This document shows positions 7,526 to 62,242 of a stretch of 64,000 nt of DNA, in pieces. A program made the position numbers and the translations under genes. Location: the NCBI RefSeq assembly GCF_006345805.1, contig NC_043015.1, forward strand, positions 6,200,001-6,264,000, in the 5' to 3' direction. This DNA comes from Octopus sinensis. Taxonomy: Eukaryota. Every line of letters starts with the position of its first letter. Within the stretch, counting starts at the first letter, position 1. Below the pieces are notes generated by a model that saw nothing but the letters and a program-made list of their open reading frames with translations, was not told the DNA's origin and did no database searches.

Positions 7526-9265
7526 AAGGTCGTGTCTTCTGTATTTCTTCGATAAATCGATTGTGGCTATATCTAGAGAAGGATTGGTTATGCTGGATTT
7601 ATAAATACCACTGGTGAACCATTTATCGAAACGGCATTCTTACACTTTCAACAAGACATACGTGTCTTACACGAGGTAAAGGATACAAAAGAAATATCCA
7701 TAAATTTCTTTGTTAACTTACTCCAACTTTGCCTACAAGAACTTTTGAAGACTTTTGGGTATATTAGCGATAATAATTTATGCAAAGGCGATGGATTAGT
7801 AGAATAAATAGTGGGAGATTAAGTCTTGTGCAACATTAAATCACACACTATTTACATTATGCGTTCAGCAGACACTGATATTAATTAATTCAGAAGGCAA
7901 CATAATACATATCCGTCATGTGCTTAACGGTCATATAGTCGATTACACCCTTCTCAATTCTTATTCAAAATCACATTCACAAAAACACACATACACATGA
8001 ACAAACACACACACACACACATGCACAGACACACACAAATACAGTTACTACACATACACACTTTTGCAAACACACATATAGTTTCAATAAGAATTCAGCT
8101 TTTAGATCAAGTGAATATTCTTACTCAAGAGAACAACGAGCAAGTAGTTGATTATTCAACAGGCAATTGTATTTCCAATATAATTCACTTGTGGAATAAA
8201 CATGAAAGATTGTAGAAGTGAAGGACGTTTGTATAACAGGTAAAATCTTGAGAGAGAGAGATAGTTAAAGAATAATCTATAGTAGTACAGGATTGGCATC
8301 TTTTTTTTATCGAACTCAAATTGATAAAAGGCAAGTGGTCGTTCAGAATGATACAAAGTGTTCAATACTCTTGCAAATATACTCTATTCGTCACCCAAAC
8401 GATTCTAACATTTCTGTGCATCTATTTTCCGATTTACAAGATTCTGATATGATCTTTGCCTCTCGTACCGGTTAGCAATTGTGTTCTAATGTATTCTCGG
8501 GTTTACCAGTACCTTGAAGCAATATCATTCACCATAGTTTCGGTTAACACAATGCTTTTCAGTGCTTATCAGAGACATTTGATTACCAACAATTATGAAA
8601 ATTACGTTGGATGCTTTGGACTGTAACAAAATCTCCTAGCCTTAATCATGCACTGGGGAAATTGTTGTGAGAATGGGTAATATTAAATGCGCAAGCGTTT
8701 GCGGAATATTTCGTCAGTTATACATTAAATCAATGAATAAGTTGATCAACTTAGCAAACAGCTGCAGAATCATCGCCGAATCTGACGAAAATCCCTTTAC
8801 TTATTACATATTCTACTTTATATACATACATTTATATGATATATACATACAGACATATATATATTGTACTGAGATTTTTTTATGAGAAAACTAGCCATTT
8901 CATCCAGAATTGCCAAGCAATAAACAAATAGCAAGCGAACAAAACAGAATGAACGAAGGAAGCAATACATTAGCTAAGTATGGCGCAGTTTCTTTAAAAA
9001 ATGTGTTTCCACCGGTTCAGTATTTTTTAGCGTTTGAAATTAAGGAGTGTGAAAGGTCAAACGTAAAATACTGTGAACTTTTAAAATAATATTCTTTTAA
9101 AAAATGGTTTGTAATGAAAAATAAGATTTAAGACAAGTTATATATACGTATGTGTATGTAAATGGATGCGTGTATGTATGTATGCATGTATGTATTTATG
9201 TACACATGTATGTATGTATCTTTATCTATGTATACATGTAAGTGACTGTATATGCACATACCTGT

Positions 9266-9344
<79 letters not shown>

Positions 9345-9345
9345 C

Positions 9346-9702
9346 GTGGAAGAGCAATGGACCAGTGGTTAGGGCAGCGGGCTCGCGGTCGTAGGATCGA
9401 GGTTTCGATTCTTAGACGGCGCGTTGTGAGTGTTTATTGAGCGAAAACACGTAATGCTCTACGACAATCCGGCAGGGTGTGCTGGCAAACTCTGCTGTAC
9501 TCTTTCACGACAACTTACTCTCATTGTTTCTTCTTGTTTCTATTGTACCTGTATTTCAAAGGGCTAGCCTTGTCACACTCTGTGTCAAGCTGAATCTCTA
9601 CGATGACTACGTTAAGGGTACACTTAACGCAATTTAATTTCGCGGCCAGGCTGTTCCGTTGATTATATCAAGTGGAGCACTAGTCGTAACCAATTGAGTA
9701 AC
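9346..9702 (+). mobile_element. tRNA-derived SINE family A (head H1, tail T1)
   Basis: A-box-like TGGACCAGTGG and B-box-like GGTTTCGATTC. The body and tail are homologous to 20829-21182 and 24447-24823. It is preceded by (TA)n. Confidence 0.85.
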
Positions 9703-9740
9703 GTAGTATATATATATATATTATATATATATATATATAT

Positions 9741-9778
<38 letters not shown>

Positions 9779-13707: not shown

Positions 13708-14065
13708 GTGTGTATGCGTGTTCGTGTGTATGCGTGTGCCTGTCGATTTATATGAGAGTGTTTGTAAATTTCTTTCGGTATGTGTCTGCTCCAGTGGATT
13801 CAGGCTTAGAGAGAGAGACAGACAGACACAGAGAGAGAGAGAAAAGGGGGGGGGGATATATTATTACACAATGTATCTTGATATATCTTCCATCTATCTG
13901 ACGGCTTGTGAGATATTGTTTATTTCCGAAAACTGGTTTGCTTGCACCCATAAATACTCAGTGCAGTCGCTAGGCTACATTGTTCAAAGAAATATATGAA
14001 ACGCTTGTAATGAACATAGTGCTTCGGGTTCTCTATTTAGAAGGCTATCGAGTCCATATACGAGC

Positions 14066-14105
<40 letters not shown>

Positions 14106-14109
14106 CACA

Positions 14110-14117
14110 CATATCCA

Positions 14118-14156
<39 letters not shown>

Positions 14157-14165
14157 TAATATATA

Positions 14166-14202
<37 letters not shown>

Positions 14203-14302
14203 CTATATATATATATATATATATACATAAAGATATATATATACATATATATATATACATATATATATATTATATACATAAAGATATATATATATACATA
14301 TA

Positions 14303-14334
<32 letters not shown>

Positions 14335-14355
14335 TATATATATACATATATATAT

Positions 14356-14389
<34 letters not shown>

Positions 14390-14449
14390 ATATATATTAT
14401 ATATATATAATATATATATATATATTATATATATATATATCAGCATACG

Positions 14450-14492
<43 letters not shown>
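14110..14492. repeat. Long (TA)n-rich array
   Basis: Direct reading of the sequence. Confidence 0.95.
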
Positions 14493-14496
<4 letters not shown>

Positions 14497-14735
14497 ACAC
14501 ATATTGTAACGTGGTAAAGTATATTATTCCTTAATTACCTTCACTGTCTAAAAGATGTAGAATAGTAAAACCATGCAATGCTTTATCTACCTATCTATCA
14601 ATATATATATCAATTTATTTATCTATCTACTTCTCTCTCTCTTCCTCTCTTTCTCTCTCTCTTCCTCACTTTACGTATATGTATGTATGTATGTATGTAT
14701 GTATGATGGCATGTATGTATGTATATATACGTATA

Positions 14736-14800
14736 CAGTAATCCCTCGCCGTATCGTGATTCACCTAACGCAGTTCACCTATCGGAGATGGTTTTGGAGC
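14736..14800 (+). mobile_element. pogo/Tigger-like terminal inverted repeat fragment
   Basis: TA|CAGTAATCCCTCGCCGTATCGTGATTCACCTAACGC resembles the TA-flanked CAGT.. termini of Tigger-type MITEs. No partner TIR was seen. Confidence 0.5.
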
Positions 14801-14901
14801 ACATACATATTTTGTTTGTTTGTTTACGTGCATGCATTTATGTATCCATCCATCCATCAAACCATCTATCCACCCATGCATATATACATGCGTATATATA
14901 T

Positions 14902-14963
<62 letters not shown>

Positions 14964-14989
14964 AAAAAAGCAACAAGAATGGATCAATG

Positions 14990-15078
14990 CTTCGGTACAA
15001 TTGTTTCGTACGAAGACATCTTTAATAAGGCTACAAAAATTGCAGTAAATATAAGTGACCCGTACTCATCAGCCGAAA
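14990..15078 (-). ncRNA. Type I hammerhead ribozyme (minus-strand copy)
   Basis: The reverse complement reads UUUCGG-CUGAUGA-GUACG..CGUAC-GAA-ACAAUUGU-A-CCGAAG. The core is canonical, stem I has 5 WC pairs plus 1 GU, and stem II has 5 bp. Confidence 0.8.
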
Positions 15079-15266
15079 AAAACATCTGAGATCTCCAAAC
15101 ATCAAAGGGGGTGATGTTACACTCGTGTAAAGTTCTATAAAAATGAGATTTAGATAACAAATGGACTTCTAAGAAGTCCATTAGAAGTCCATTTTTATAG
15201 AACTTTCCATGATGTTTCACGAGTGTAACATCACCCCCTTTGATGTTTGGAGATCTCAGATGTTTT

Positions 15267-15355
15267 TTTCGGCTGATGAGTACGGGTCACTTATATTTAC
15301 TGCAATTTTTGTAGCCTTATTAAGGATGTCTTCGTACGAAACAATTGTACCGAAA
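15267..15355 (+). ncRNA. Type I hammerhead ribozyme (plus-strand copy)
   Basis: Stem I TTTCGG(15267-72)/CCGAAA(15350-55), CTGATGA (15273-79), stem II GTACG(15280-84)/CGTAC(15333-37), GAA (15338-40), palindromic helix III ACAATTGT (15341-48). The GUA triplet puts predicted cleavage after 15349. Confidence 0.85.
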
Positions 15356-15496
15356 CGTTGATCCATTCTTGTTGCTTTTTTCCTATTTATAATCACCCCG
15401 CATTGTCGTATGGTTAACACCATATAGATTTCTGGTGCATCCAAGTTAAGTAGCATATTCAGGTGAATTCAACAGAACTCACTTGAATCTTAATTG

Positions 15497-15563
<67 letters not shown>

Positions 15564-15643
15564 ATAAGTATGTATGTATGTATATGTATATATGTATATA
15601 TATATATATAATATATATTATATATATATATATATATTATATA

Positions 15644-15674
<31 letters not shown>

Positions 15675-18600
15675 GGTGTTTGTATATATATATATATATG
15701 TTCTATCTTCGTAAGAATTCTTTTTATTTCCCGCCAAGATGTATTGACACTGGCACTTCTGGTCTTGAAATGCTACAATAATGAAATTGGAACCTGTATC
15801 TTTATTCTATACTATTCTTGAATTTTGTTGGTGTTTTAATATGCCTTTAACAAGCTTCCAGTTCCATATATGTATGAATAAAATTACTGACATACGCACT
15901 CAGAGACACACGTAGCAGAGAGTAACACAAATACAATTATTTTAACTTAATATCTGTACTCTTAAATTCCTTAATACACGATTTGGGAAAGAACGAGCCT
16001 GTTCGTCGTCAAAGTAATCAGAACATTTGAGAAACATGGTCGCAAACATAAAGGTCATTTACTTCAAGCATCACATTTTAACTAATTATAGTTCGAAATC
16101 TGTAAACAAATTTATGTAAGTGTCGCCATTTTCTGTAACTGAACACATTTTTTTTTGCTCCTATGAATTTTGTCCGCAGTTGAGCCAATTGTTAGATATT
16201 TAGTCAACTAGGCACTAGTGGATCCTTACAGTTTTGGTAGTTCTGCTTTCTACCTTCGTTGTCTTATCTAAATCTCAACTATGATCAATAGTGTTCCTAC
16301 TGCTGTTAGAATTCAATGCGGTAGCCCTGTTCTCTTTGAATTTCTTTTGATTCAGCTCATCTTTATTCGATCATCTGTGTTCGAAAGCATACATGGTAAA
16401 ATACTTTCTCCAGTGTAGTTATTTATTTTATTTAACAGAGTAGTGTGATTTCAGAGGGAGCTAGTGACAGTCTCTATCAGATGAAGCAAATATGCAATAT
16501 TCATCCTATTGTTATTCCAAGTTGTTTCAAAGCCAAATGTTTTTACACTTTAATGAAGCTCCCGATTAAAATGGTTTAACACTAATCATGCTGTTCGTTT
16601 AGCAATAAGCAAGACTGCATTAGCCAACATATTCTTTACTTTTGAAATGATTGTCGATTGAGATTAGAGTGAGGTCTTGCATTTATATCTGATTGTACAG
16701 ATACAACGTACAAGCTATATATAAATTGATGGCTGTTACCTTAGCATACAGTAAGGAGAGGAAAACATCTCGGCTTTAATAGTCCATGGCAGAAACATTA
16801 ACTGACACACAATTATTTAAAATTTTATGACTTCCAAAACGAAGTTCATTCTGTAAAAATTCGACGTAGATCAATAATGTCCTGAGAAAATTATGAGCAT
16901 TGTTAAAACAATCAATGTCCTTCTTGAATTTATGTGAGAGATACATTATTAATCATACGTGTCATATAAATTATGATTTATCACAATCGCAAAGAGGTCA
17001 AAAATATGTCACGAGTGAGATTTAGTGTTTTCTGTTTCTACCATCATCCGGCTGCAGAATATCGACTCTACAACGATTTTATCACCAATACATCTCTTAT
17101 TTTAGTGTTTTGTAAACACCATGGTTAAAATCATAGAGATACATGACCTTCGAATTTGAGTGTTCTATGTATTTTAAGAAGATAGCCCTCATGAAAGGTT
17201 AGAGAGTCTAATGTTCAGTTAATGCCTTACAGTATGAATGTTATATCTACCCATCGGAAATGGAGAGTGCTTCACTACTTCGCCATTAGCGCTTCGCAGA
17301 TGGATGACTCTGATATAACAGAAAAATAAATGGCCCGTATAATTCGAGTTGGTTGCCTTAACACATGCATTTTCATGCATCACCTCTCACTTTGACGAAG
17401 TTCCTTTTATGCCAGATTCTGACACATATTCTCATTATTTCGGCTCAACGAAGTTGTATTGGAATATATAGATTCTGAATATTCAAAGCAGGAGTGTTAT
17501 GCTACTGGGCTATTTTTAGTGCTGCTGGATTCCCCGTTACGGACAATAAAGGACTTGACATGGGTACATGCATGTCATGAACATGTTTAAGCAGTTCCTT
17601 AATCTTTAGTGTTACTGTTCGCCATATACGGCTTTTTTAACTGGAAAAAATTCAAATTCTTCTTTTTACTGCACATCTAATAAGTCAGTGTCAATACGTA
17701 AAGGGATATTAGATATTAATTTCTCATACGATAAATTATACTAAATCTAGATGTATCTTTACCCAATAGAGCTTATGAAGTCTTTATTCCCAATGTATTC
17801 AATTGAAATCTCGGATATGTTTCGCCTTCATTGTAAGGCAGCAAATAAAAGCATGGCGAATTTTGAGTAAATGTTGAATAAGTTATAAATAGTGAAGTAC
17901 ATATGAAGAATAAAACACTTTCCCAACAATGATTGACAGAAGAAGTTCTAACAAGATTACATGGTGCTTTGTTTAGTTAGCTAATCGCAGGAACAACCAC
18001 ACAAAAATGATAAATAAATCAAATATACAAACGTAGAGAAAAATAAATGATAAATAAAAGATTTAAAACTCCATGTATTTCAATATAGCCTGCACTTAGG
18101 AAATAGAAATAAGAAATTACTAATTTTTACCTCGAGACTAGATTATCTTTAATCTTACAGTAAAAAAAAAGTGGAGGGTGGAGGATAAAAATACTACAAG
18201 ATAAGCTTTATTGATTTTCCTGAGTAGAAAATAACTTTCGAGTTAAATCTTCCTAAAAGTATCCACCAGGATTGCATTATCGTTCTTTTGTGAAGACGAC
18301 ATGTTGGAAAATTGAATGTAATATCGATAATAAAAACTTATTCCAGCCAAAAGGTATTAGCCGAATGACATTAGATGAAAACAAACATTAGAATGAGAAT
18401 ATCCTCCTCAGTTAAACCCATTACCTGTTTTAAAGAATACCCAAACTGCTATTGCTGACAGTTTTTCATGTAAATCGATGAATTTAAGCATTAATATTTA
18501 GTATTTCAGCATCAACTACAATTTTCCTCCTTCCATAAAGATATTTAATACATCGAACCTCTACGTTTGTTTGTTGTCCTTTTTATTTTCACTTCGTTTC

Positions 18601-19601: not shown

Positions 19602-20720
19602 ACAAAAATATAACACTGGTACAAGGCATATAGAACTATGCTTCTATGTGCAAGGAAAGTGAAAATCAAAAAGAAAATATATGATTACTCAGCGAAGAAA
19701 ATGTGTTTTGTTTTAACAGAAAAGCAACAATAGAAATAGTTTAGCTGTGAGGTGTAGATTTCTGTATATTTGTAGGAATTTCATAATTATAAAAAAACTG
19801 AGAAAAGGACTTGAAACGCAACGAGTGTTAACTCGTCGATTTAATACTATCATATGGTAGCCTGGATAAATTTAGCATTCACTCTGTCAACGGCATTCGC
19901 GTTACATATCTAGTTTTTGGTTTCCTTCCTCATTCCATTCCACCTGTCAATGCCATGGCTCTAGAAACGCATTGCCAGCAATCAGCCAATATGAATATAT
20001 AATTAGGTAAAAAAAGGTATTGCTTTTAACATTTATTTCAAATTATGTGAAATATTTTTAAAAATCGTATTGACAGCAAGGGAATATCTTGATTAAACTT
20101 GGAAAGATGACGGAGTAGTTATAATAATGTTCTACCAAAATCATATTAATCTAGGAGAGTTATAATCGCATGCCCTAAAAATATAGTCTGCAAACTTTTT
20201 GAACGCACCTCGCAAATGTATGTATATGTGTGTTTGTATGGATGTGTATCTTTGTCATTTTATGACTTTATCTCTCCATTTAGTAAAGGTGTTGTTTAGT
20301 TCCTCTCACTGCATCTAGGGACTTTCGCAAAAGCAGAAATATACATCCCACAGAATACGTAACGGATCATGCATGCATATGTCTATAATATATATATATC
20401 ACTGTATGTTTTATTTCTTTCTTGAAGTTTGCATCTATCAGTTACTGATCGTGTGTGAACTCTCAATAATCTGTCACAGATACAGGTATGTTTCTGAAGC
20501 CTCCTAAATGAAGAATATGTACGGCCATCATTTGAGATAGTGGTTGTCTTTACAATTTGATCTTTGACTAACAGGGCGATTCCATTTCAATACTTGTATA
20601 TTTAAAGAAGCAAATTTAAAAAAATAAATGGAAATCATACACCTCTATGTTTTCTACGTATATAACGTGTACATGTATATATATCTAACCATATTCTGTG
20701 TCTATCTATATATCTATCTA

Positions 20721-20762
<42 letters not shown>

Positions 20763-20828
20763 ATATGCGTGTGATTGCATGTGCATGTGTGAGTGTAGAT
20801 CTGTATGTATATATATATATATATATCG

Positions 20829-21178
20829 TGCACTCAGTCGGTTATGACAACGAGGGTTCAAGTTGATCCGATCAACAGAACACCCTGATCGTGAAACTAA
20901 CGTGCAAGGGGATAAGCATTTCAAGGACATGTGTACCCTTAACGTAGTTCGCGGGGAGATTCAGCGTGACACAGAGTCGGAATACTGTTACAATAGAAGC
21001 AGGAAGAACGTGCGAGAGAAAGTTGTGGTGAAAGACTACAGTAGTGTTCGTCATCACCCCTTGCCGTAGCATTGTGTTGTTTGCGATCAATAGACACTCA
21101 CAACGTCTTGTCTGGGAATCGAAACCACGATCCTACAATTGTGAGTCCGCTCCCCTAACCACTGGGCCATTGCGCCTC

Positions 21179-21182
<4 letters not shown>
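20829..21182 (-). mobile_element. tRNA-derived SINE family A (H1, T1)
   Basis: The reverse complement begins TGTGGAGGCGCAATGGCCCAGTGGTTAGG..GGTTTCGATTCC. The tail contains the GTTGATC-C-GATCAAC hairpin. It is flanked by (TA)n. Confidence 0.88.
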
Positions 21183-21216
<34 letters not shown>

Positions 21217-23690: not shown

Positions 23691-24408
23691 GGTTTCTGAA
23701 GATTATTGTGATATATGTTAGTTAAATTATAGTAATTGCCTTACAGAAAATATTATTTGAAGTTATTTGAAATAAATATTCTTATTCATATGAAACGATA
23801 ATACATTACTTGATAGAGACGACTTAATGATGTCTGTGAACGTCTATATTAGGAAATATGTTTAATAAATGGATTGACAAATATACGAAATATTATGAAT
23901 GTATGACAATGATAAACAGTCACAGAATATATTTCATGAGAGCTAACCAATAACATCTGCCACTTACGTCATTACAAAGAAGTGAAATACAATTAATTAA
24001 TATTCTGCTGCTTTGTGCTCTGTACATTTATATACAAACATAATTTCATTATTGCGTTTTAGAATACAATTTCGTCGAAATTAATGTCCCTCAGGTTTGC
24101 TTTGGGAAACACTATCATGTGAGTTCGTCATTATACTAATGGTCACAAACGGCCATTTATATTGATTTATTGCAGCAACAAAATGGAAAGCAATGAAATG
24201 TTGTGGCTTTCATTCCCCACCATAGAATATCAATAATTCGAATGTAAATTCTCCGTCAGCGAGTACACGAACGTGTGACTGACAAAGGAGGTTAGAAATC
24301 GATATTGTTGTTTGTTAGATGTCAACTGTCATCTGGTTTAACCTTATCCTTTGGTCACTGAGTGCATTTAGCAAGCATCCTAGTGAAGAATGCGGTCAGA
24401 GGATATCA

Positions 24409-24446
<38 letters not shown>

Positions 24447-24448
<2 letters not shown>

Positions 24449-24823
24449 AAGCACTCCGTCGGTTACGACGACGAGGTCCGGTTGATCCGAATCAACGGAA
24501 CAGCCTGCTCGTGAAATTAACGTGTAAGTGGCTGAGCACTCCACAGACACGTGTACCCTTAACGTAGTTCTCGGGGATATTCAGCGTGACACAGAGAGTG
24601 ACAAGGCGGTCCTTTGAAATACAGGTACAACAGAAACAGGAAGTAAGAGTGAGAGAAAGTTGTGGTGAAAGAGTACAGCAGGGATCACCACCATCCCCTG
24701 CCGGAGCCTCGTGGAGCTTTAGGTGTTTTCGCTCAATAAACACTCACAACGCCCGTCGGGAATCGAAACCGCGATCCTATGACCGCGAGTCCGCTGCCCT
24801 AACCATTGGGCCATTACGCCCCC
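24447..24823 (-). mobile_element. tRNA-derived SINE family A (H1, T1), well-preserved copy
   Basis: Full head, body and tail are present and it sits inside (TA)n on both sides. Confidence 0.92.
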
Positions 24824-24844
24824 TATATATATATATATATATAT

Positions 24845-24904
<60 letters not shown>

Positions 24905-24929
24905 TATATATATAAATATATATATATAT

Positions 24930-25007
<78 letters not shown>

Positions 25008-27998: not shown

Positions 27999-28231
27999 TA
28001 TTTCTTTACTGCCCACAAGGGGCTAAACATAGAGGGGACAAACAAGGACAGACAAAGGGATTAAGTCGATTACATCGACCCCAGTGCGGAACTGGTACTT
28101 TATTTATCGACCCCTAAAGGATGAAAGGCAAAGTCGACCTCGGCGGAATTTGAACTCAGAACGTAGCGATAGACGAAATACCGCTAAGCATTTCGCCCGG
28201 CGCGCTAACGTTTCTGCCAGCTCGCCGCCCT
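27999..28231 (-). mobile_element. SINE family B (monomer)
   Basis: The reverse complement reads GGCGGCGAGCTGGCAGAAACGTTAGC..GTTCTGAGTTCAAATTCCGCCGAGGTCGACTTTGCCTTTCATCC..GTCGATAAATAAAGTACCAG. It is homologous to 39679-40130 and 51255-51603. Confidence 0.9.
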
Positions 28232-31139: not shown

Positions 31140-31545
31140 GCTACCGTGCCAGGCAAAATGCTCAGCGGCATCGCACCGATGTCGACTTTGTTTTTTTATT
31201 CTTTCTTGGTCGAACAATTAAGTACCATTCAGACACTGGAGTCGGTTTAATTGACTTAATCCTTTTTCCGAAATTGCTGACCATGTGCCAAAATTTGAAA
31301 CCATTATTATTATATAAGAATTATATTTTTCTAAAGCAGGGAGCAGACAGAATTTTCAGTAGCCCCAGGCAAAATACTTAGCGGCATTTCATCCTACATT
31401 GGGTTCTATGTTTCATTTCTGCCGAGGTCTACTTTGCCTTTTAGCCATTCAGGCTCGATAAAATATGTACAATATCAGCGCTGAGGCAAGATTATCGATT
31501 TTCCTTCCCCGCAAATTTCGGGATCTGTGCCTTTAGTAGAAAGGA
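31140..31545 (+). mobile_element. Two adjacent old SINE family B-related copies
   Basis: GTCGACTTTG..GTCGA..AAGTACCA..ACTGGAGTCG and GCCGAGGTCTACTTTGCCTT..TGTGCCTTTAGTAGAAAG motifs. Confidence 0.6.
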
Positions 31546-32630: not shown

Positions 32631-32718
32631 TATTCTGTTGTGTCTGGGGAGAGTCATTCTCTTTTAGTGTCTTATAAGGCACAAAAAGAAAATTACTCTC
32701 CCCAGACACGACAGAATA
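32631..32718. repeat. 88-nt near-perfect palindrome/hairpin
   Basis: The 44-nt arms are centred on CTTA|TAAG. By manual pairing there are 39 WC pairs, 2 GU and 3 mismatches. Confidence 0.9.
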
Positions 32719-39678: not shown

Positions 39679-40130
39679 AACGGTGAGCTGGCAGAAACGT
39701 TAGCACGCCGGGTGAAATGCGTAGCCGTATTTCGTCTGCCGCTACGTTCTGAGTTCAAATTTCACCTCAGCGGAATTTGAACTCAGAACGTAACGGCAAA
39801 CGAAATTCGGCTACGCATTTCGTCCAGCGTGTTAACGTTTCTGCCAGCTCGCCGCCGATTAAAAAAGTACCACTTCCACACTGGGGTCGATATAATCGAC
39901 TTAATCTGTCTGCTTGTCCTTGTTTGTCCCCTCAGTATTTAGCTTCTTGAGGGTAGTAAAGAAATAGGTATTTCGTCTGTCTGTATGTTCTGAGTTCAAA
40001 TTCAGCCGTGGCCGACTTCGTTTTTCATCCATTCGGGGATGGTAAATTAAGTACCAGTTGTGTAGTGGGGTGGATCTAAACGACTGACCCTCACCCTAAA
40101 AATGTTGGGCTTTGTGCCTAGAGTAGAAAA
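39679..40130 (+). mobile_element. Dimeric SINE family B with an internal fold-back duplication of its head
   Basis: Head (39681-39761), inverted head (39764-39856), then the remainder of monomer 1 and a second monomer ending TGTGCCTAGAGTAGAAAA. Confidence 0.88.
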
Positions 40131-42420: not shown

Positions 42421-43059
42421 GTGAGTCAATTTTTGAATTTGATTCAAAGTTCTTTTAATATAATATTGTATATTTCTGGAACGAAACAACATTTCTCTGG
42501 CACCAGAAGAATTATAAATACACCATTCTCTAAAGAAGGTAAGGACGTCGTGGGAATTCTTAACTGTACTTTTCAGAAAGATTTCAAATAGATATTTGGT
42601 GCTTGTTATTGCTATTTATCATACATTAACTTGGATTAAATAACGCATCTTAGAAAGTAAGTACTGCTAGCATCTCTCAGTGGAAGCACGGCTTATATTC
42701 TTCCTGCATATCTGAATAAATTGTGAACCTTTGCCATGACCGAATTGTATTATGTTACGACTCAAGATCTCGTTAGGAATCCCTTACTTTGAACTGAGAA
42801 TTGACCCGTATATACCCTGAAATCCGATATGCAGCAATTATAGAAAGTTTCGTAAGAGCTAAATAAGAAAATTAAATGAATCTTTAAAAATACTTTTCCT
42901 TTTCGCGTCCCCAAATTTAATTCTCCTTTGAATTAATTGGAAGTATCTAACTGCCAAGAAAGATAGATAAACAGCCAAGATATGATCTGTTTACAACAAC
43001 TAAAATAAATATAAATAACATATATGCATTGATTTTTTCATCGGTGTATTACACATGCA

Positions 43060-43368
43060 TGTGGAGGCGCAACGTCCCAGTGGTTAAGGCAGCGGACTCG
43101 CGGTCGGAAGATCGTGGTTTCGATTCCCAGACCGGGCGTTGTGTGTGTTTATTGAGTGAAAACACCTAAGAACTCCATAAGGCTCCGGCAGGGAGTGGTG
43201 GCGACCCCTGCTGTACTCTTTCGTCACAACTTTCTCTCATACTCTCTTCCTGTTTCTTGAGTAACGCTGCAATGGACTGGCGTCCCGTCCAGCTGGGGGG
43301 TACACATGCGCCACAGAAACCGGGAAACCGGGCCCATGAGCCTGGCTAGGCTTGAAAAGGATGACGTG
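43060..43368 (+). mobile_element. tRNA-derived SINE family A (H1, tail T2)
   Basis: It has the H1 head and body. The tail GTAACGCTGCAATGGACTGG..GAAACCGGGCCCATGAGCCTGGCTAGGCTTGAAAAGG is shared with 61654-61960. Confidence 0.9.
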
Positions 43369-43941: not shown

Positions 43942-44009
43942 TTTAAGCACTTTTGTCAAAACACTGTAGAAAAGAGTTATTTAGGTATCTTATATATTAT
44001 ATGAATTTA

Positions 44010-44302
44010 TGTGGAGGCGCAATGGCCCAATGGTTAGTGCAGCGGACACGCGATCGTAGTTTCGATTCCCAGACTGGGCGTTGTGAGTGTTTATTGAGCG
44101 AATACACCTAAAGCTCCACGAGTCTCCGGCAGGGGGTGGTGGCGACCCCTGCTGTACTCTACCACCACAACTTTCACTCTTTCTTCTGTTGACCTGTTTG
44201 TTTAGCCAGCGGGGTGGTGGCATTTGAAGGCTAAAACAATGCGAAGCGCATTGTGACCAGCGATGTGTAGTAATATCTGATGGTCACGGTGATCATCGTG
44301 AT
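44010..44302 (+). mobile_element. tRNA-derived SINE family A (H1, tail T3)
   Basis: H1 head and body followed by a different tail (GACCTGTTTGTTTAGCCAGCGGGGTGG..GTGACCAGCGATGTGTAG..GTCACGGTGAT). Confidence 0.85.
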
Positions 44303-51254: not shown

Positions 51255-51603
51255 TTTAATACTGGGTTCAAATGGTGAAACAAGGCCGGCAGTTTAGCGT
51301 GTGGTTGCAGTGCTAAGTCGAATAAATCGATACCAGTGTACACCTGGTACTTTATATCCCGTGAAAGGATAAAATGCAAAGTCGACCTCGGACGAATTTC
51401 AACTCAGAACGTAGCGGCATACGAAATACCTGTTTCTTTACTACTCACAAGGGGCTAAACACAGAGAGGACAAACAGGGAAAGACAAACGGATTAAGTCG
51501 ATTATATCGACCCCAGGGCGTAACTGGTACTTATTTAATCGACCCCGAAAGGAAGAAAGGCAAAGTCGACCTCGGCAGAATTTGAACTCAGAACGTGGCG
51601 GCA
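51255..51603 (-). mobile_element. Dimeric SINE family B, 5'-truncated
   Basis: Two tandem AAAGTCGACCTCGG..AACTCAGAACGT units with a linker homologous to 27999-28231. Confidence 0.85.
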
Positions 51604-54619: not shown

Positions 54620-55173
54620 TTGGGTTGGCAACAAGTCATACCGTTTTTAAAATTATGGAATTTATTGCGTTGTATTGCATTTTTTTATATTTGGAAGGTA
54701 TTTTTTTCGGGAATTCTATCTTTGAATCATTATCATTTTCAAATCTTTTTTTTTTAATAATTTTTTATCTATTTTTCAGATCATTAAAATGGAATGTCAA
54801 ATTAAGAAAAACGACACCTTCTTTTTGCTTTTAATCAAGGTTCTAAGGCCGCAAAAGCTGTGTATGGAGAAGTAGCCATAGCTAAAAGAGCAGCTCGTGA
54901 TTGGTGTGCCAAGTTCAAAAATTTCCAATTTTGACCTCCAAGACGCACCTTGATCGTCTAGTTGAGTTCGATGGAGAGCGATTAAACCACGCTTTACACG
55001 AAATTTCTCGTCAAATGACAGGGGAACTGGCATAGGAAATGGAATGCTCCCACACTGCTGTAGAGAAGCATCTTCACACGATGGGAAAGGTACAGAAGTA
55101 TGGAGCATGGGTTCCGCATGCTTTAAGTGACAACAACAAAAATCAACGTGTCACAATCTCCGCTGGTTTCCTT
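54620..55173 (+). mobile_element. Decayed mariner transposon 5' half (Hsmar1/cecropia-like)
   Basis: TIR TTGGGTTGGCAAC.. after (TA)n. Frameshifted MECQIKKN../ VYGEVAIAKRAARDWCAKFK / MECSHTAVEKHLHTMGKVQKYGAWVPHALSDNNKNQRVTISAG, containing the WVPH(E)L motif. Confidence 0.92.
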
Positions 55174-55474
55174 GTGTTACATGTGTTGTATGTTAGCTCA
55201 TGTTGTCTGCACTACAGTTTAAATGTGAAAGTGAATGAAGAACAAAGTAAGATTTTGTGTTTTGATTGGGAATACAATACGCCCCCTATTCCAAGAATTG
55301 AATCCATGATCGCGAGAACGAGAGTTCAATACCCTGTCCACCTGGCTTTTCACACCCATATATATATATATACACATACATATTATACATATATATATAT
55401 ACATGCTATATAACATATATTATTTACTAGATATTATATATGTACACATACGTGGCACACACACAAACACACAC

Positions 55475-56445: not shown

Positions 56446-56655
56446 GGTACTCAGTCGGTTACGACGACGAGTCATTCAGGTGATCCGATCGACGGAACAG
56501 CCTGCTCATGAAATTCACGTGCATGTGTATGAGTAGAGACACGCGTACCCTTAGAGTATTTCTCATACTCATTTTTGTTACTTGAGTGGACGGTAGCAAC
56601 GTGAAATAAACTGTCTTGCTCAGGAACACAACGAGTCGCCTGGAATCGAACTCAC
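56446..56655 (-). mobile_element. SINE with a different (CORE-like) body but tail T1
   Basis: The reverse complement has GTTCGATTCCAGG..TGTGTTCCTGAGCAAGACAGTTTATTTCACGTTGCT, followed by the T1 tail (CAGGCTGTTCCGT..GATCGGATC..TCGTCGTCGTAACCGAC). Confidence 0.7.
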
Positions 56656-61530: not shown

Positions 61531-61653
61531 CGATAAATAAAGACGTAAAAAATCGCATAAAAATATATGCATACTTACACACACATAAATTATATATCGA
61601 TCTATCCATCCCTATGTGTAAATATATATATATATATATATATAAACGATAAA

Positions 61654-61960
61654 CGTCGCCCTTTTCAAGCTTAGCTAGGTTCATGGGCCTGGTTTCCCGG
61701 TTTCTGTGGCGTAGGTGTTCCTTCCAGATGGCCGGGAAGTCAGTCCATCGCGGCGTTACTCAAGAAACAGGAAGAGAGAGTGAGAGAAAGTTGTGGCGAA
61801 AGAGTCCAACAGGCGTCGCCACCATCCCATGCTGGAATCCGTGGAGCTATTAGGTTTTTTCGCTCAATAAATATACACAACGCCCGGTCTAGGAATCGAA
61901 ACCGCGATCCTCCGACCGCGAGTCCGCTGTCCTAACCACTGGGTCATTGCGCCTCCACAT
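61654..61960 (-). mobile_element. tRNA-derived SINE family A (H1, tail T2)
   Basis: Reverse-complement homologue of 43060-43368, inside (TA)n. Confidence 0.9.
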
Positions 61961-61977
61961 ATGTGTGTATATATATA

Positions 61978-62043
<66 letters not shown>

Positions 62044-62242
62044 TATATATATATGTATATAGAAATATACATACACATACACACACATACATGTATGTAT
62101 ATATACATATACACACATATATAGTCACGCTCGTCCATGCGTGATTATAGATTCACAAACATACTTACATACATGCATATCTAAGTCTATATAATGAAGA
62201 AACAACATGTATAGACACATAAGCGTGCAAGAGCACTTAAAT

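What the first reader, a model, noticed from the sequence alone, without database searches (positions are those of the whole stretch)
14964..15381. Loop-less ~420-bp palindrome carrying two intact hammerhead ribozymes, one on each strand
Seen in sequence: 14964-15127 and 15218-15381 are reverse complements at 161/164 nt, symmetry continues with indels to a 1-nt centre (15171), and each arm contains a complete type I hammerhead. Any transcript crossing the locus, in either direction, therefore carries one sense ribozyme plus its near-perfect antisense. Established: Penelope-like elements and retrozymes carry type I hammerheads with palindromic helix III in their terminal repeats, and PLE insertions often have an inverted 5' pLTR. 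Inference: this is a recent non-autonomous foldback element whose RNA can either self-cleave (co-transcriptionally or as a dimer) or snap into a ~190-bp dsRNA that silences the ribozyme and is a potential ADAR/Dicer substrate. That would be a fold-controlled, bidirectional self-cleaving unit, which I do not know to be described in cephalopods.
Basis: partly seen in the sequence, partly recalled or inferred. Interest (0 to 1): 0.92.

Follow-up and report, generated by a model that had tools for sequence, protein, structure and literature searches.

The report
Inverted retroelement fragment pair with hammerhead motifs
The 418-bp palindrome and its two hammerhead ribozyme motifs are real, but they look like the ordinary head-to-head double insertion that Penelope-like/retrozyme retroelements often leave behind, not a purpose-built ribozyme switch.

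Summary
Arms 14964-15130 and 15215-15381 are reverse complements (163/167). Symmetry continues, with three indels, to a 1-nt centre at 15171. Each arm carries a complete type I hammerhead motif on the strand that reads outward: full core, 6-bp helix I, 5-bp helix II with G10.1-C11.1, and a 2-bp helix III with a palindromic AAUU loop. Rfam Hammerhead_1 matches both arms over the whole model, but at 22.6 and 21.0 bits, below the gathering score of 34. A 48-nt insert in helix II lowers the score.

The anatomy fits published Penelope-like element insertions: two 5'-truncated copies head to head, 3' ends outward, no ORF, abutting a (TA)n tract. The ribozyme has the shape of the invertebrate retrozyme type.

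The proposed fold-controlled bidirectional ribozyme is not supported. In any read-through transcript the antisense arm is made first. The full hairpin is about -320 kcal/mol against -18.5 for the hammerhead fold. Weak-helix-III hammerheads need a second sense copy, which this locus never puts on one RNA.

I found no other copy in the window or in the collections I could search. Family membership and copy number are therefore untested. This is most likely a new member of a known kind, of modest interest.

The parts
14964..15381 (.). Whole palindrome (418 bp): two head-to-head copies of about 208-210 nt of one hammerhead-bearing sequence
   Evidence: As RNA it folds into a single hairpin of -322.6 (+) / -315.4 (-) kcal/mol.
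14964..15130 (-). Left arm. The sense (ribozyme) strand is the - strand, with its 3' end at 14964.
   Evidence: 167 nt, 163/167 complementary to the right arm.
15215..15381 (+). Right arm. The sense (ribozyme) strand is the + strand, with its 3' end at 15381.
15131..15214 (.). Rearranged centre. The two 5'-truncated ends meet here. There are three indels, including an 11-nt AGAAGTCCATT duplication on the right. A perfect 11-1-11 palindromic core lies at 15160-15182, centred on A15171.
   Evidence: Alignment; sequence.
15267..15355 (+). Type I hammerhead motif, right arm. Helix I 15267-15272 / 15350-15355 (UUUCGG/CCGAAA). Core CUGAUGA 15273-15279. Helix II 15280-15284 / 15333-15337 (GUACG/CGUAC). 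48-nt insert 15285-15332. GAAA 15338-15341. Helix III ACAAUUGU 15341-15348. A17 at 15349, with predicted cleavage 15349|15350.
   Evidence: Rfam RF00163, 22.6 bits, E 0.0013, model 1-45, below the gathering score of 34. Descriptor hit. Pairs listed.
14990..15078 (-). Type I hammerhead motif, left arm, the mirror image of the right one. Core CUGAUGA at 15072-15066. A17 is the complement of 14996, with predicted cleavage between 14996 and 14995. The outermost helix I pair is U-G instead of U-A.
   Evidence: Rfam RF00163, 21.0 bits, E 0.0041, model 1-45. Descriptor hit.
14903..14960 (.). Left flank: compound (CA)n(TA)n microsatellite abutting the palindrome, followed by G and an A8 run (14962-14969)
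15382..15497 (+). 116 nt of unique sequence between the right arm and the next (TA)n tract. It is either a 3' extension of the right copy or original host sequence; this is undecided.
   Evidence: No counterpart on the left and no other copy in the window.
15499..15562 (.). Right (TA)n(TG)n microsatellite. Together with the left flank it would form a (CA)n(TA)n(TG)n tract if 14961-15498 is the insertion.
   Evidence: (I4-I7)

Best explanation
The locus is a short, non-coding, dead-on-arrival fragment of a hammerhead-bearing retroelement. The element belongs to the Penelope-like element (PLE) / non-LTR retrozyme lineage. The fragment is present as two 5'-truncated copies joined head to head, with both 3' ends pointing outward.

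Most likely both copies arose in one integration event. A PLE-type enzyme cuts and primes reverse transcription on both target strands. Two cDNAs then grow toward each other and are joined by a template switch at microhomology, or one cDNA snaps back on itself. Small indels at the centre came later.

The hammerheads are passengers inherited from the parent element. At this locus they are expected to be silent. A transcript that crosses the palindrome folds into a dsRNA hairpin of about 200 bp. A transcript of one arm alone carries a weak-helix-III ribozyme with no second sense copy to dimerise with.

Shown: the palindrome, the motif and its orientation, the energies, and the absence of an ORF or a second copy in the window. 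Inferred: the PLE/retrozyme parentage, the formation mechanism, and the lack of activity.
For: (1) Motif. Every invariant hammerhead core base is present, with a G10.1-C11.1 pair, a 6-bp helix I, and a 2-bp helix III capped by the palindromic tetraloop AAUU. This is the architecture published for metazoan type I ribozymes and 'invertebrate HHRs' (PMC4209133; PMC7229834).
(2) Chance. The descriptor gives 2 hits in the window and 0 in 40 Mb of random sequence. Rescaling the Rfam E-value to one family gives about 1.6e-4 per 64-kb window.
(3) Orientation. Both sense strands read outward, so the 5' ends meet at the centre. PLE insertions 'often' have an inverted 5'-truncated copy adjacent, carry the hammerhead near the 3' end, and favour microsatellites including (TA)n (PMC8557442).
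(4) Mechanism. [quoted passage not shown]
(5) Context. Retrozymes are reported to be derivatives of PLE pLTRs (bioRxiv 10.64898/2026.07.22.740005).
(6) Coding. There is no long non-repetitive ORF, no tRNA and no Pfam hit nearby.
(7) Age. The arms differ at 4/167 positions, none in the core, so the duplication is recent.
(8) Not an artefact. The symmetry stops at 14964 and 15381, the flanks differ, and the arms differ by substitutions and indels.
Against: No homology to any PLE, pLTR or retrozyme could be shown. No eukaryotic genome or repeat library was available, and there is no other copy in the window. Pattern scans of the metagenome, viral and prokaryote collections gave only chance matches or nothing.

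Both covariance-model scores are below Rfam's gathering score. By the same E-value, a 3-Gb genome should hold several chance hits of this score.

Helix II carries a 48-nt insert, which is not the usual short stem-loop, and loop-loop tertiary contacts cannot be recognised.

Abutting (TA)n is weak evidence, because (TA)n tracts of at least 8 units cover 4.75% of the window.

Two independently primed copies would not be expected to truncate at almost the same point. The near-equal arms therefore favour a snap-back or a DNA-level inverted duplication over simple twin priming.
Confidence: 0.6

Rival explanations
1. A solo hammerhead-bearing retroelement fragment was duplicated in inverted orientation later, at the DNA level. 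The route would be a replication template switch or hairpin-mediated break repair, not reverse transcription.
For: The arms are nearly equal (208 against 210 nt), with a perfect 11-1-11 palindromic core at the centre. Two other near-loopless palindromes built from unrelated repeats lie in the same window, at 39681-39854 and 32631-32718. Inverted duplication may therefore be a general feature of this genome.
Against: The symmetry does not extend into unique flanking sequence: the 116 nt at 15382-15497 have no left counterpart. The outward orientation of both 3' ends is what the PLE mechanism predicts.
Confidence: 0.17
2. The palindrome is a foldback or MITE-type DNA transposon whose long terminal inverted repeats happen to contain a captured hammerhead-bearing sequence. 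It would move as a unit, which is the first reader's 'foldback element'.
For: Almost the whole unit is inverted repeat. It is short, non-coding and AT-rich.
Against: No target-site duplication is visible at 14963/15382. There is no second copy in 64 kb of very repeat-rich sequence. No terminal motif of a known superfamily was recognised.
Confidence: 0.1
3. The hammerhead is a chance motif inside an unrelated inverted duplication. The duplication simply doubled it.
For: Both Rfam scores are below the gathering score. The two motifs are one event, not two. By the Rfam E-value (about 3e-7 per 123 nt for one family), I estimate a handful of such hits per 3 Gb by chance. The hammerhead fold is not the minimum-energy fold of an isolated arm.
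Against: The motif is well above my descriptor's minimum: helix I of 6 bp, helix II of 5 bp, and a self-complementary ACAAUUGU helix III. It has family-typical details, namely G10.1-C11.1 and a palindromic loop 3. Genomes that carry PLEs or retrozymes hold thousands of true motifs (PMC4209133, PMC7229834), which far outnumbers the chance expectation.
Confidence: 0.06
4. The locus is a working RNA gene. It would be either a long hairpin RNA feeding Dicer/ADAR, or a switch in which hairpin formation gates the ribozyme.
For: A read-through transcript would form a near-perfect dsRNA of about 200 bp. The ribozyme cores are untouched by the four arm differences.
Against: There is no evidence of transcription and no promoter information. 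Four differences are too few to show selection. The order of transcription and the energy gap of about 300 kcal/mol leave no realistic 'on' state. The Rfam miRNA-type hits are generic hairpin matches far below their gathering scores.
Confidence: 0.04
5. The palindrome is an assembly or chimeric-read artefact.
For: Palindromes and PLE insertions are known to trouble assemblies (PMC8557442).
Against: The arms differ by 4 substitutions and 3 indels. The symmetry is confined to 418 bp with different flanks. A missed-adapter chimera would mirror the flanks as well.
Confidence: 0.03

Closest known systems
Penelope-like element (PLE) insertions: pLTR/3'-terminal hammerhead with an adjacent inverted 5'-truncated copy (Cervera & de la Pena 2014, PMC4209133; Craig et al. 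2021, PMC8557442)
   Same: The type I hammerhead lies near the 3' end of the unit. Two 5'-truncated copies sit in inverted orientation with 3' ends outward. The insertion is next to a microsatellite. There is no poly(A) tail.
   Different: There is no RT/GIY-YIG ORF and no full-length partner; both copies are only about 210 nt. Sequence homology to any PLE was not shown. The ribozyme has a real helix III and a 6-bp helix I, so it is not the 'minimal' PLE variant. Helix II carries a 48-nt insert.
Metazoan non-LTR retrozymes (Cervera & de la Pena 2020, PMC7229834; Li et al. 2026 preprint, 10.64898/2026.07.22.740005)
   Same: It carries a canonical-style type I hammerhead with a 2-bp helix III and a tetraloop, as in 'invertebrate HHRs'. 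It has low GC (about 37%). The unit length of roughly 200-300 nt is in the retrozyme range. It is non-coding.
   Different: Retrozymes are direct tandem repeats, which is what allows double-hammerhead cleavage and circular RNA formation. Here the two copies are inverted and there is no tandem partner.
Satellite and SINE-like hammerhead repeats of newts and schistosomes (Rfam Hammerhead_1 seed type; from my own knowledge)
   Same: It is the best Rfam match. It has the same core and a short palindromic helix III, which in those systems requires dimers (Forster et al. 1988, as cited in PMC4209133).
   Different: The score is below the family's gathering score. Helix II has a long insert. It is not in a tandem array.
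Hammerhead arms of viroid-like circular RNAs with ribozymes in both polarities (Avsunviroidae; from my own knowledge)
   Same: On one strand, a sense ribozyme lies opposite the complement of the other-polarity ribozyme, and their pairing suppresses cleavage.
   Different: Those are type III ribozymes in imperfectly paired RNA replicons. Here there is a 98% perfect DNA palindrome of type I motifs, best explained by a recent duplication.

Membership tests
Hammerhead ribozyme, type I (Rfam RF00163) | Invariant core C3-U4-G5-A6-N7-G8-A9, G12-A13-A14, A15.1-U16.1, H17 | tested here: met
   CUGAUGA ... GAAA ... U-A is present in both arms. Every core column matches in the cmscan alignments and in the descriptor hits.
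Hammerhead ribozyme, type I (Rfam RF00163) | Three helices around the core, helix I open-ended, with a G10.1-C11.1 pair | tested here: met
   Helix I has 6 bp, helix II has 5 bp (GUACG/CGUAC), and helix III is A-U, C-G plus an AAUU loop.
Hammerhead ribozyme, type I (Rfam RF00163) | Covariance-model score at or above the curated gathering score (34 bits) | tested here: not met
   The scores are 22.6 and 21.0 bits. There was no hit in the gathering-mode search or in the 551-nt E-value search.
Hammerhead ribozyme, type I (Rfam RF00163) | Core conservation and compensatory changes among related copies | tested here: inconclusive
   Only the two arms are available. They differ at 4 positions, one of which turns a helix I U-A pair into U-G. 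This is too few to show constraint.
Hammerhead ribozyme, type I (Rfam RF00163) | Site-specific self-cleavage | not testable with these tools
   This needs in vitro transcription. The hammerhead fold is 4.7-7.5 kcal/mol above the minimum-energy fold of an isolated arm.
Penelope-like element (insertion or fragment) | ORF with a telomerase-like RT and a GIY-YIG endonuclease | tested here: not met
   There is no non-repetitive ORF next to the palindrome. The ten best ORFs of the window have no Pfam hit. The locus can therefore be at most a truncated or non-autonomous derivative.
Penelope-like element (insertion or fragment) | Hammerhead in the terminal repeat, and complex insertions with an inverted 5'-truncated copy | tested here: met
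   Both sense strands read outward and the 5' ends meet at 15171. The feature is as described in PMC8557442.
Penelope-like element (insertion or fragment) | Sequence homology to a PLE pLTR or consensus | not testable with these tools
   No eukaryotic genome or repeat library was on hand. The scans that were possible found nothing related.
Penelope-like element (insertion or fragment) | Insertion bias for microsatellites | tested here: inconclusive
   The left end abuts (CA)n(TA)n, and (TA)n(TG)n follows 116 nt after the right end. However, (TA)n tracts cover 4.75% of the window.
Non-LTR retrozyme | Direct tandem repeats of 150-450 bp, each with a type I hammerhead | tested here: not met
   The two copies are inverted. 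No direct copy exists in the window.
Non-LTR retrozyme | Low GC, non-coding, expressed as circular RNA | tested here: inconclusive
   GC of about 0.37 and the lack of coding capacity meet the first two criteria. Expression is not testable.
MITE / foldback DNA transposon | Terminal inverted repeats plus a target-site duplication, in many copies | tested here: not met
   Inverted repeats are present, but no target-site duplication is visible at 14963/15382 and there is no second copy in the window. Genome-wide copy number is untested.
microRNA / hairpin-RNA gene | Match to a curated family, or small-RNA evidence | tested here: not met
   MIR2934 scored 44.9 against a gathering score of 100, and other hairpin-type hits are also far below their gathering scores. 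Small-RNA data are not available.

The most novel reading that the evidence does not exclude
The palindrome could be the DNA copy, or the gene, of a self-complementary rod-like RNA that carries a type I hammerhead in both polarities. This would be a viroid-like or retrozyme-like replicon, or a hairpin-RNA gene. In it, pairing of each ribozyme with the complement of the opposite-polarity ribozyme would keep the monomer uncleaved, and cleavage would occur only in nascent or multimeric RNA.
Probability: 0.04. Interest if true: 0.8.

Novelty: new member of a known kind. Interest (0 to 1): 0.27.

Why it matters
If the parentage is confirmed, the locus is a clean, young example of how Penelope-like/retrozyme integration produces head-to-head copies. 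Its junction (15131-15214) records the template switch. It would also add a hammerhead variant with a 48-nt helix II insert to the metazoan catalogue, possibly from a lineage where these ribozymes have not been explicitly described. I found no paper describing hammerheads in octopus genomes beyond the general statement that canonical PLEs carry them.

It also makes a useful general point. Inverted PLE insertions automatically pair each ribozyme with its antisense, so hammerhead motif counts in genomes overstate the number of ribozymes that can ever fold. Any function of this locus itself is unlikely.

Tried and rejected
1. The Rfam gathering-score search of the whole window gave nothing. The 551-nt E-value search gave only generic hairpin hits to miRNA and sRNA families, far below their gathering scores. 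I reject these as meaningless. The hammerhead appeared only in the 123-nt searches.
2. I looked for relatives with exact-pattern scans built from the hammerhead. The metagenome scan gave one hit and the prokaryote-genome scan gave three. On reading, the metagenome hit lacks helices I and III. I take the three prokaryote hits as chance matches from their number and source, without reading them. The viral contigs gave none.
3. I hoped gene callers had translated other copies, so I searched the 100-aa ORF spanning the palindrome against the 5.8-billion-protein collection. It found no candidate. Exact look-ups of three ORFs over the locus found none on record. No independent assembly of the locus could therefore be examined.
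4. A sensitive blastn and nhmmer search of the right arm plus the 116-nt extension against the rest of the window found nothing beyond chance.
5. A literature search for the core strings returned only unrelated primer sequences.
6. I checked for a tRNA-derived SINE origin and found no tRNA in the window. I looked for a PLE or other TE protein nearby and found no Pfam hit for ten ORFs.
7. I considered (TA)n target preference as strong evidence and rejected it, because (TA)n tracts are too dense here.
8. I considered a missed-adapter artefact and rejected it from the sequence, because the arms and the flanks differ.

Full report
**1. The observation**

The repeat finder reports arms 14964-15130 and 15215-15381, 167 nt each, 98% complementary, with 84 nt between them.

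A global alignment of the two halves carries the symmetry through three indels to a perfect core, AATGGACTTCT-A-AGAAGTCCATT (15160-15182), centred on A15171. As RNA, either strand folds into one hairpin with a 3-nt loop, at -322.6 (+) and -315.4 (-) kcal/mol.

The symmetry ends sharply at 14964 and 15381. The flanks differ and the arms differ by substitutions and indels. A missed-adapter or chimeric-read artefact is therefore unlikely from the sequence alone.

**2. The hammerheads**

On the + strand, the right arm reads as follows:
- Helix I: UUUCGG (15267-15272), paired with CCGAAA (15350-15355).
- Core: CUGAUGA (15273-15279).
- Helix II: GUACG (15280-15284), a 48-nt insert, then CGUAC (15333-15337).
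- GAAA at 15338-15341.
- Helix III: ACAAUUGU (15341-15348).
- A17 at 15349.

The left arm is the mirror image on the - strand (15078-14990). Its outermost helix I pair is U-G instead of U-A.

Rfam gave no hit at gathering scores for the whole window. It also gave no hammerhead hit in a 551-nt E-value search. When 123-nt stretches were searched, Hammerhead_1 (RF00163) aligned over its whole length with every core column matching. The scores were 22.6 bits (E 0.0013) and 21.0 bits (E 0.0041), both below the gathering score of 34. The long helix II insert is the obvious penalty.

My own structural descriptor finds exactly these two sites in the window and none in 40 Mb of composition-matched random sequence. 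A relaxed descriptor adds nothing.

I rescaled the Rfam E-value to one family. That gives about 1.6e-4 expected hits per 64-kb window, but several per 3-Gb genome. The motif alone is therefore not proof at genome scale. The two motifs are also one event that was doubled by the duplication.

The fine detail counts in favour of a real motif. Published descriptions of metazoan type I hammerheads give a 6-bp helix I, a conserved G10.1-C11.1 pair, and a 1-2-bp helix III capped by a small palindromic loop (PMC4209133). The 'invertebrate' form has two pairs and a tetraloop (PMC7229834). This motif has all of these features.

Genomes with such elements carry thousands of copies. Published counts are about 2,000 in Schistosoma, about 5,000 in a mussel and about 120,000 in axolotl. 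True motifs therefore far outnumber chance ones.

**3. Anatomy and surroundings**

Both ribozyme-sense strands read outward. The two copies therefore meet 5' end to 5' end at the centre, and their 3' ends sit at 14964 and 15381. Each copy ends ...GCUUUUUU.

There is no coding capacity. The ORFs over the locus are short and the neighbouring ones are low-complexity. There is no tRNA in the window and no Pfam hit for the ten best ORFs.

The left end abuts (CA)n(TA)n. On the right, 116 nt of unique sequence (15382-15497) precede (TA)n(TG)n. No target-site duplication is visible. No other copy of the arm, the centre or the 116-nt stretch occurs in the window.

The window is very repeat-rich. It holds 109 (TA)n tracts of at least 8 units (4.75% of the window), several dispersed repeat families, and two further near-loopless palindromes built from other repeats.

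**4. What it most likely is**

The arrangement matches published PLE insertions. [quoted passage not shown]

A purified PLE protein cleaves and extends both target strands, unlike R2 and L1 (PMC11167929). That directly predicts two cDNAs growing toward each other with 3' ends outward.

Animal retrozymes, whose ribozyme shape this motif resembles most, are reported to be non-autonomous derivatives of PLE terminal repeats (10.64898/2026.07.22.740005). I could not verify the organism.

The nearly equal arms and the palindromic core suggest a snap-back or a switch from one cDNA to the other, not two independent truncations. A later DNA-level inverted duplication is the main rival.

I put 0.6 on the retro-integration reading and 0.17 on the DNA-level duplication. 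Both readings agree that the unit is a relic of a hammerhead-bearing retroelement.

**5. How it behaves**

The proposed switch does not follow from it, for three reasons.
- Order of synthesis. Because both ribozymes face outward, the antisense arm is always transcribed first. The hairpin nucleates at the centre, and the ribozyme strand is zipped up as it emerges. Helix I cannot close until position 15350 is made.
- Energies. The gap is about 300 kcal/mol: -322.6 for the hairpin against -18.5 for the hammerhead fold. Even an isolated arm prefers a different fold by 4.7 kcal/mol (right arm) or 7.5 kcal/mol (left arm).
- Dimer requirement. Hammerheads with this weak helix III are reported to cleave efficiently only as dimers of two sense copies (PMC4209133; PMC7229834). 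ACAAUUGU could form an 8-bp intermolecular helix III (-6.4 kcal/mol). An inverted pair, however, never puts two sense copies on one RNA.

Activity would require transcription starting between the centre and the ribozyme, for which there is no evidence. This paragraph rests on inference from the structure and the energies, not on experiment.

**6. Comparison and novelty**

The locus works like, and probably descends from, PLE/retrozyme hammerhead repeats. The membership tests gave these results:
- Hammerhead family: core and helices met; the curated score not met; covariation inconclusive; cleavage untestable.
- PLE: the inverted truncated structure met; the ORF not met; homology untestable.
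- Retrozyme: the defining direct tandem arrangement not met.
- MITE: no target-site duplication and no other copies in the window.

I therefore file it as a probable new member of a known kind, namely a truncated, inverted, hammerhead-bearing retroelement fragment. Its one unusual feature is the 48-nt helix II insert.

The most novel reading not excluded is a self-complementary rod-like RNA with hammerheads of both polarities, or a hairpin-RNA gene. I give it about 4%.

**7. Dead ends**

- Pattern scans of the public collections gave only chance matches or nothing.
- The protein-word search with the ORF across the palindrome found nothing.
- Exact look-ups of three ORFs over the locus found nothing on record.
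- The literature string search returned only unrelated papers.

As a result, copy number, parent element, empty site and independent confirmation of the assembly all remain open. They are the decisive next steps.

Noticed in passing
window 39681-39854 (related copies at 27999-28229, 39856-40085, 51314-51603, 31362-31486): A second near-loopless palindrome (81-nt arms, 90% complementary, 12-nt spacer). It is built from a repeat family of about 115 nt that elsewhere occurs in direct tandem. Rfam mir-8489 matches it on both strands at 52-55 bits, below the gathering score of 99. It has no hammerhead core.
   Followed up: partly
window 32631-32718: A third small palindrome: 44-nt arms, no spacer, 89% complementary. 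It is unrelated to the other two.
   Followed up: no
window 9171-9750, 20701-21216, 24403-25007, 43051-43367, 43991-44205, 56449-56564, 61653-62130: A dispersed repeat family of up to about 600 bp, with at least seven copies at 68-85% identity on both strands. Its translated fragments have no Pfam hit.
   Followed up: partly
whole window; densest at 14000-15700: Microsatellite density is extreme. There are 109 (TA)n tracts of at least 8 units, covering 4.75% of the window, often compounded with (CA)n or (TG)n. This weakens any argument from 'inserted next to (TA)n'.
   Followed up: yes
window 55036-55410 (+): An ORF fragment with a 'GAWVPHALSDNNKNQRV' stretch that I recall as resembling mariner-type transposases. 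The Pfam scan gave no hit at E <= 0.01, so this is unconfirmed.
   Followed up: partly
window 14962-14969 and 15376-15381: Each ribozyme-sense copy ends in an oligo-U run (8 on the left copy, 6 on the right), which would read as an RNA polymerase III terminator. Whether the run belongs to the element or to the target is unknown.
   Followed up: no
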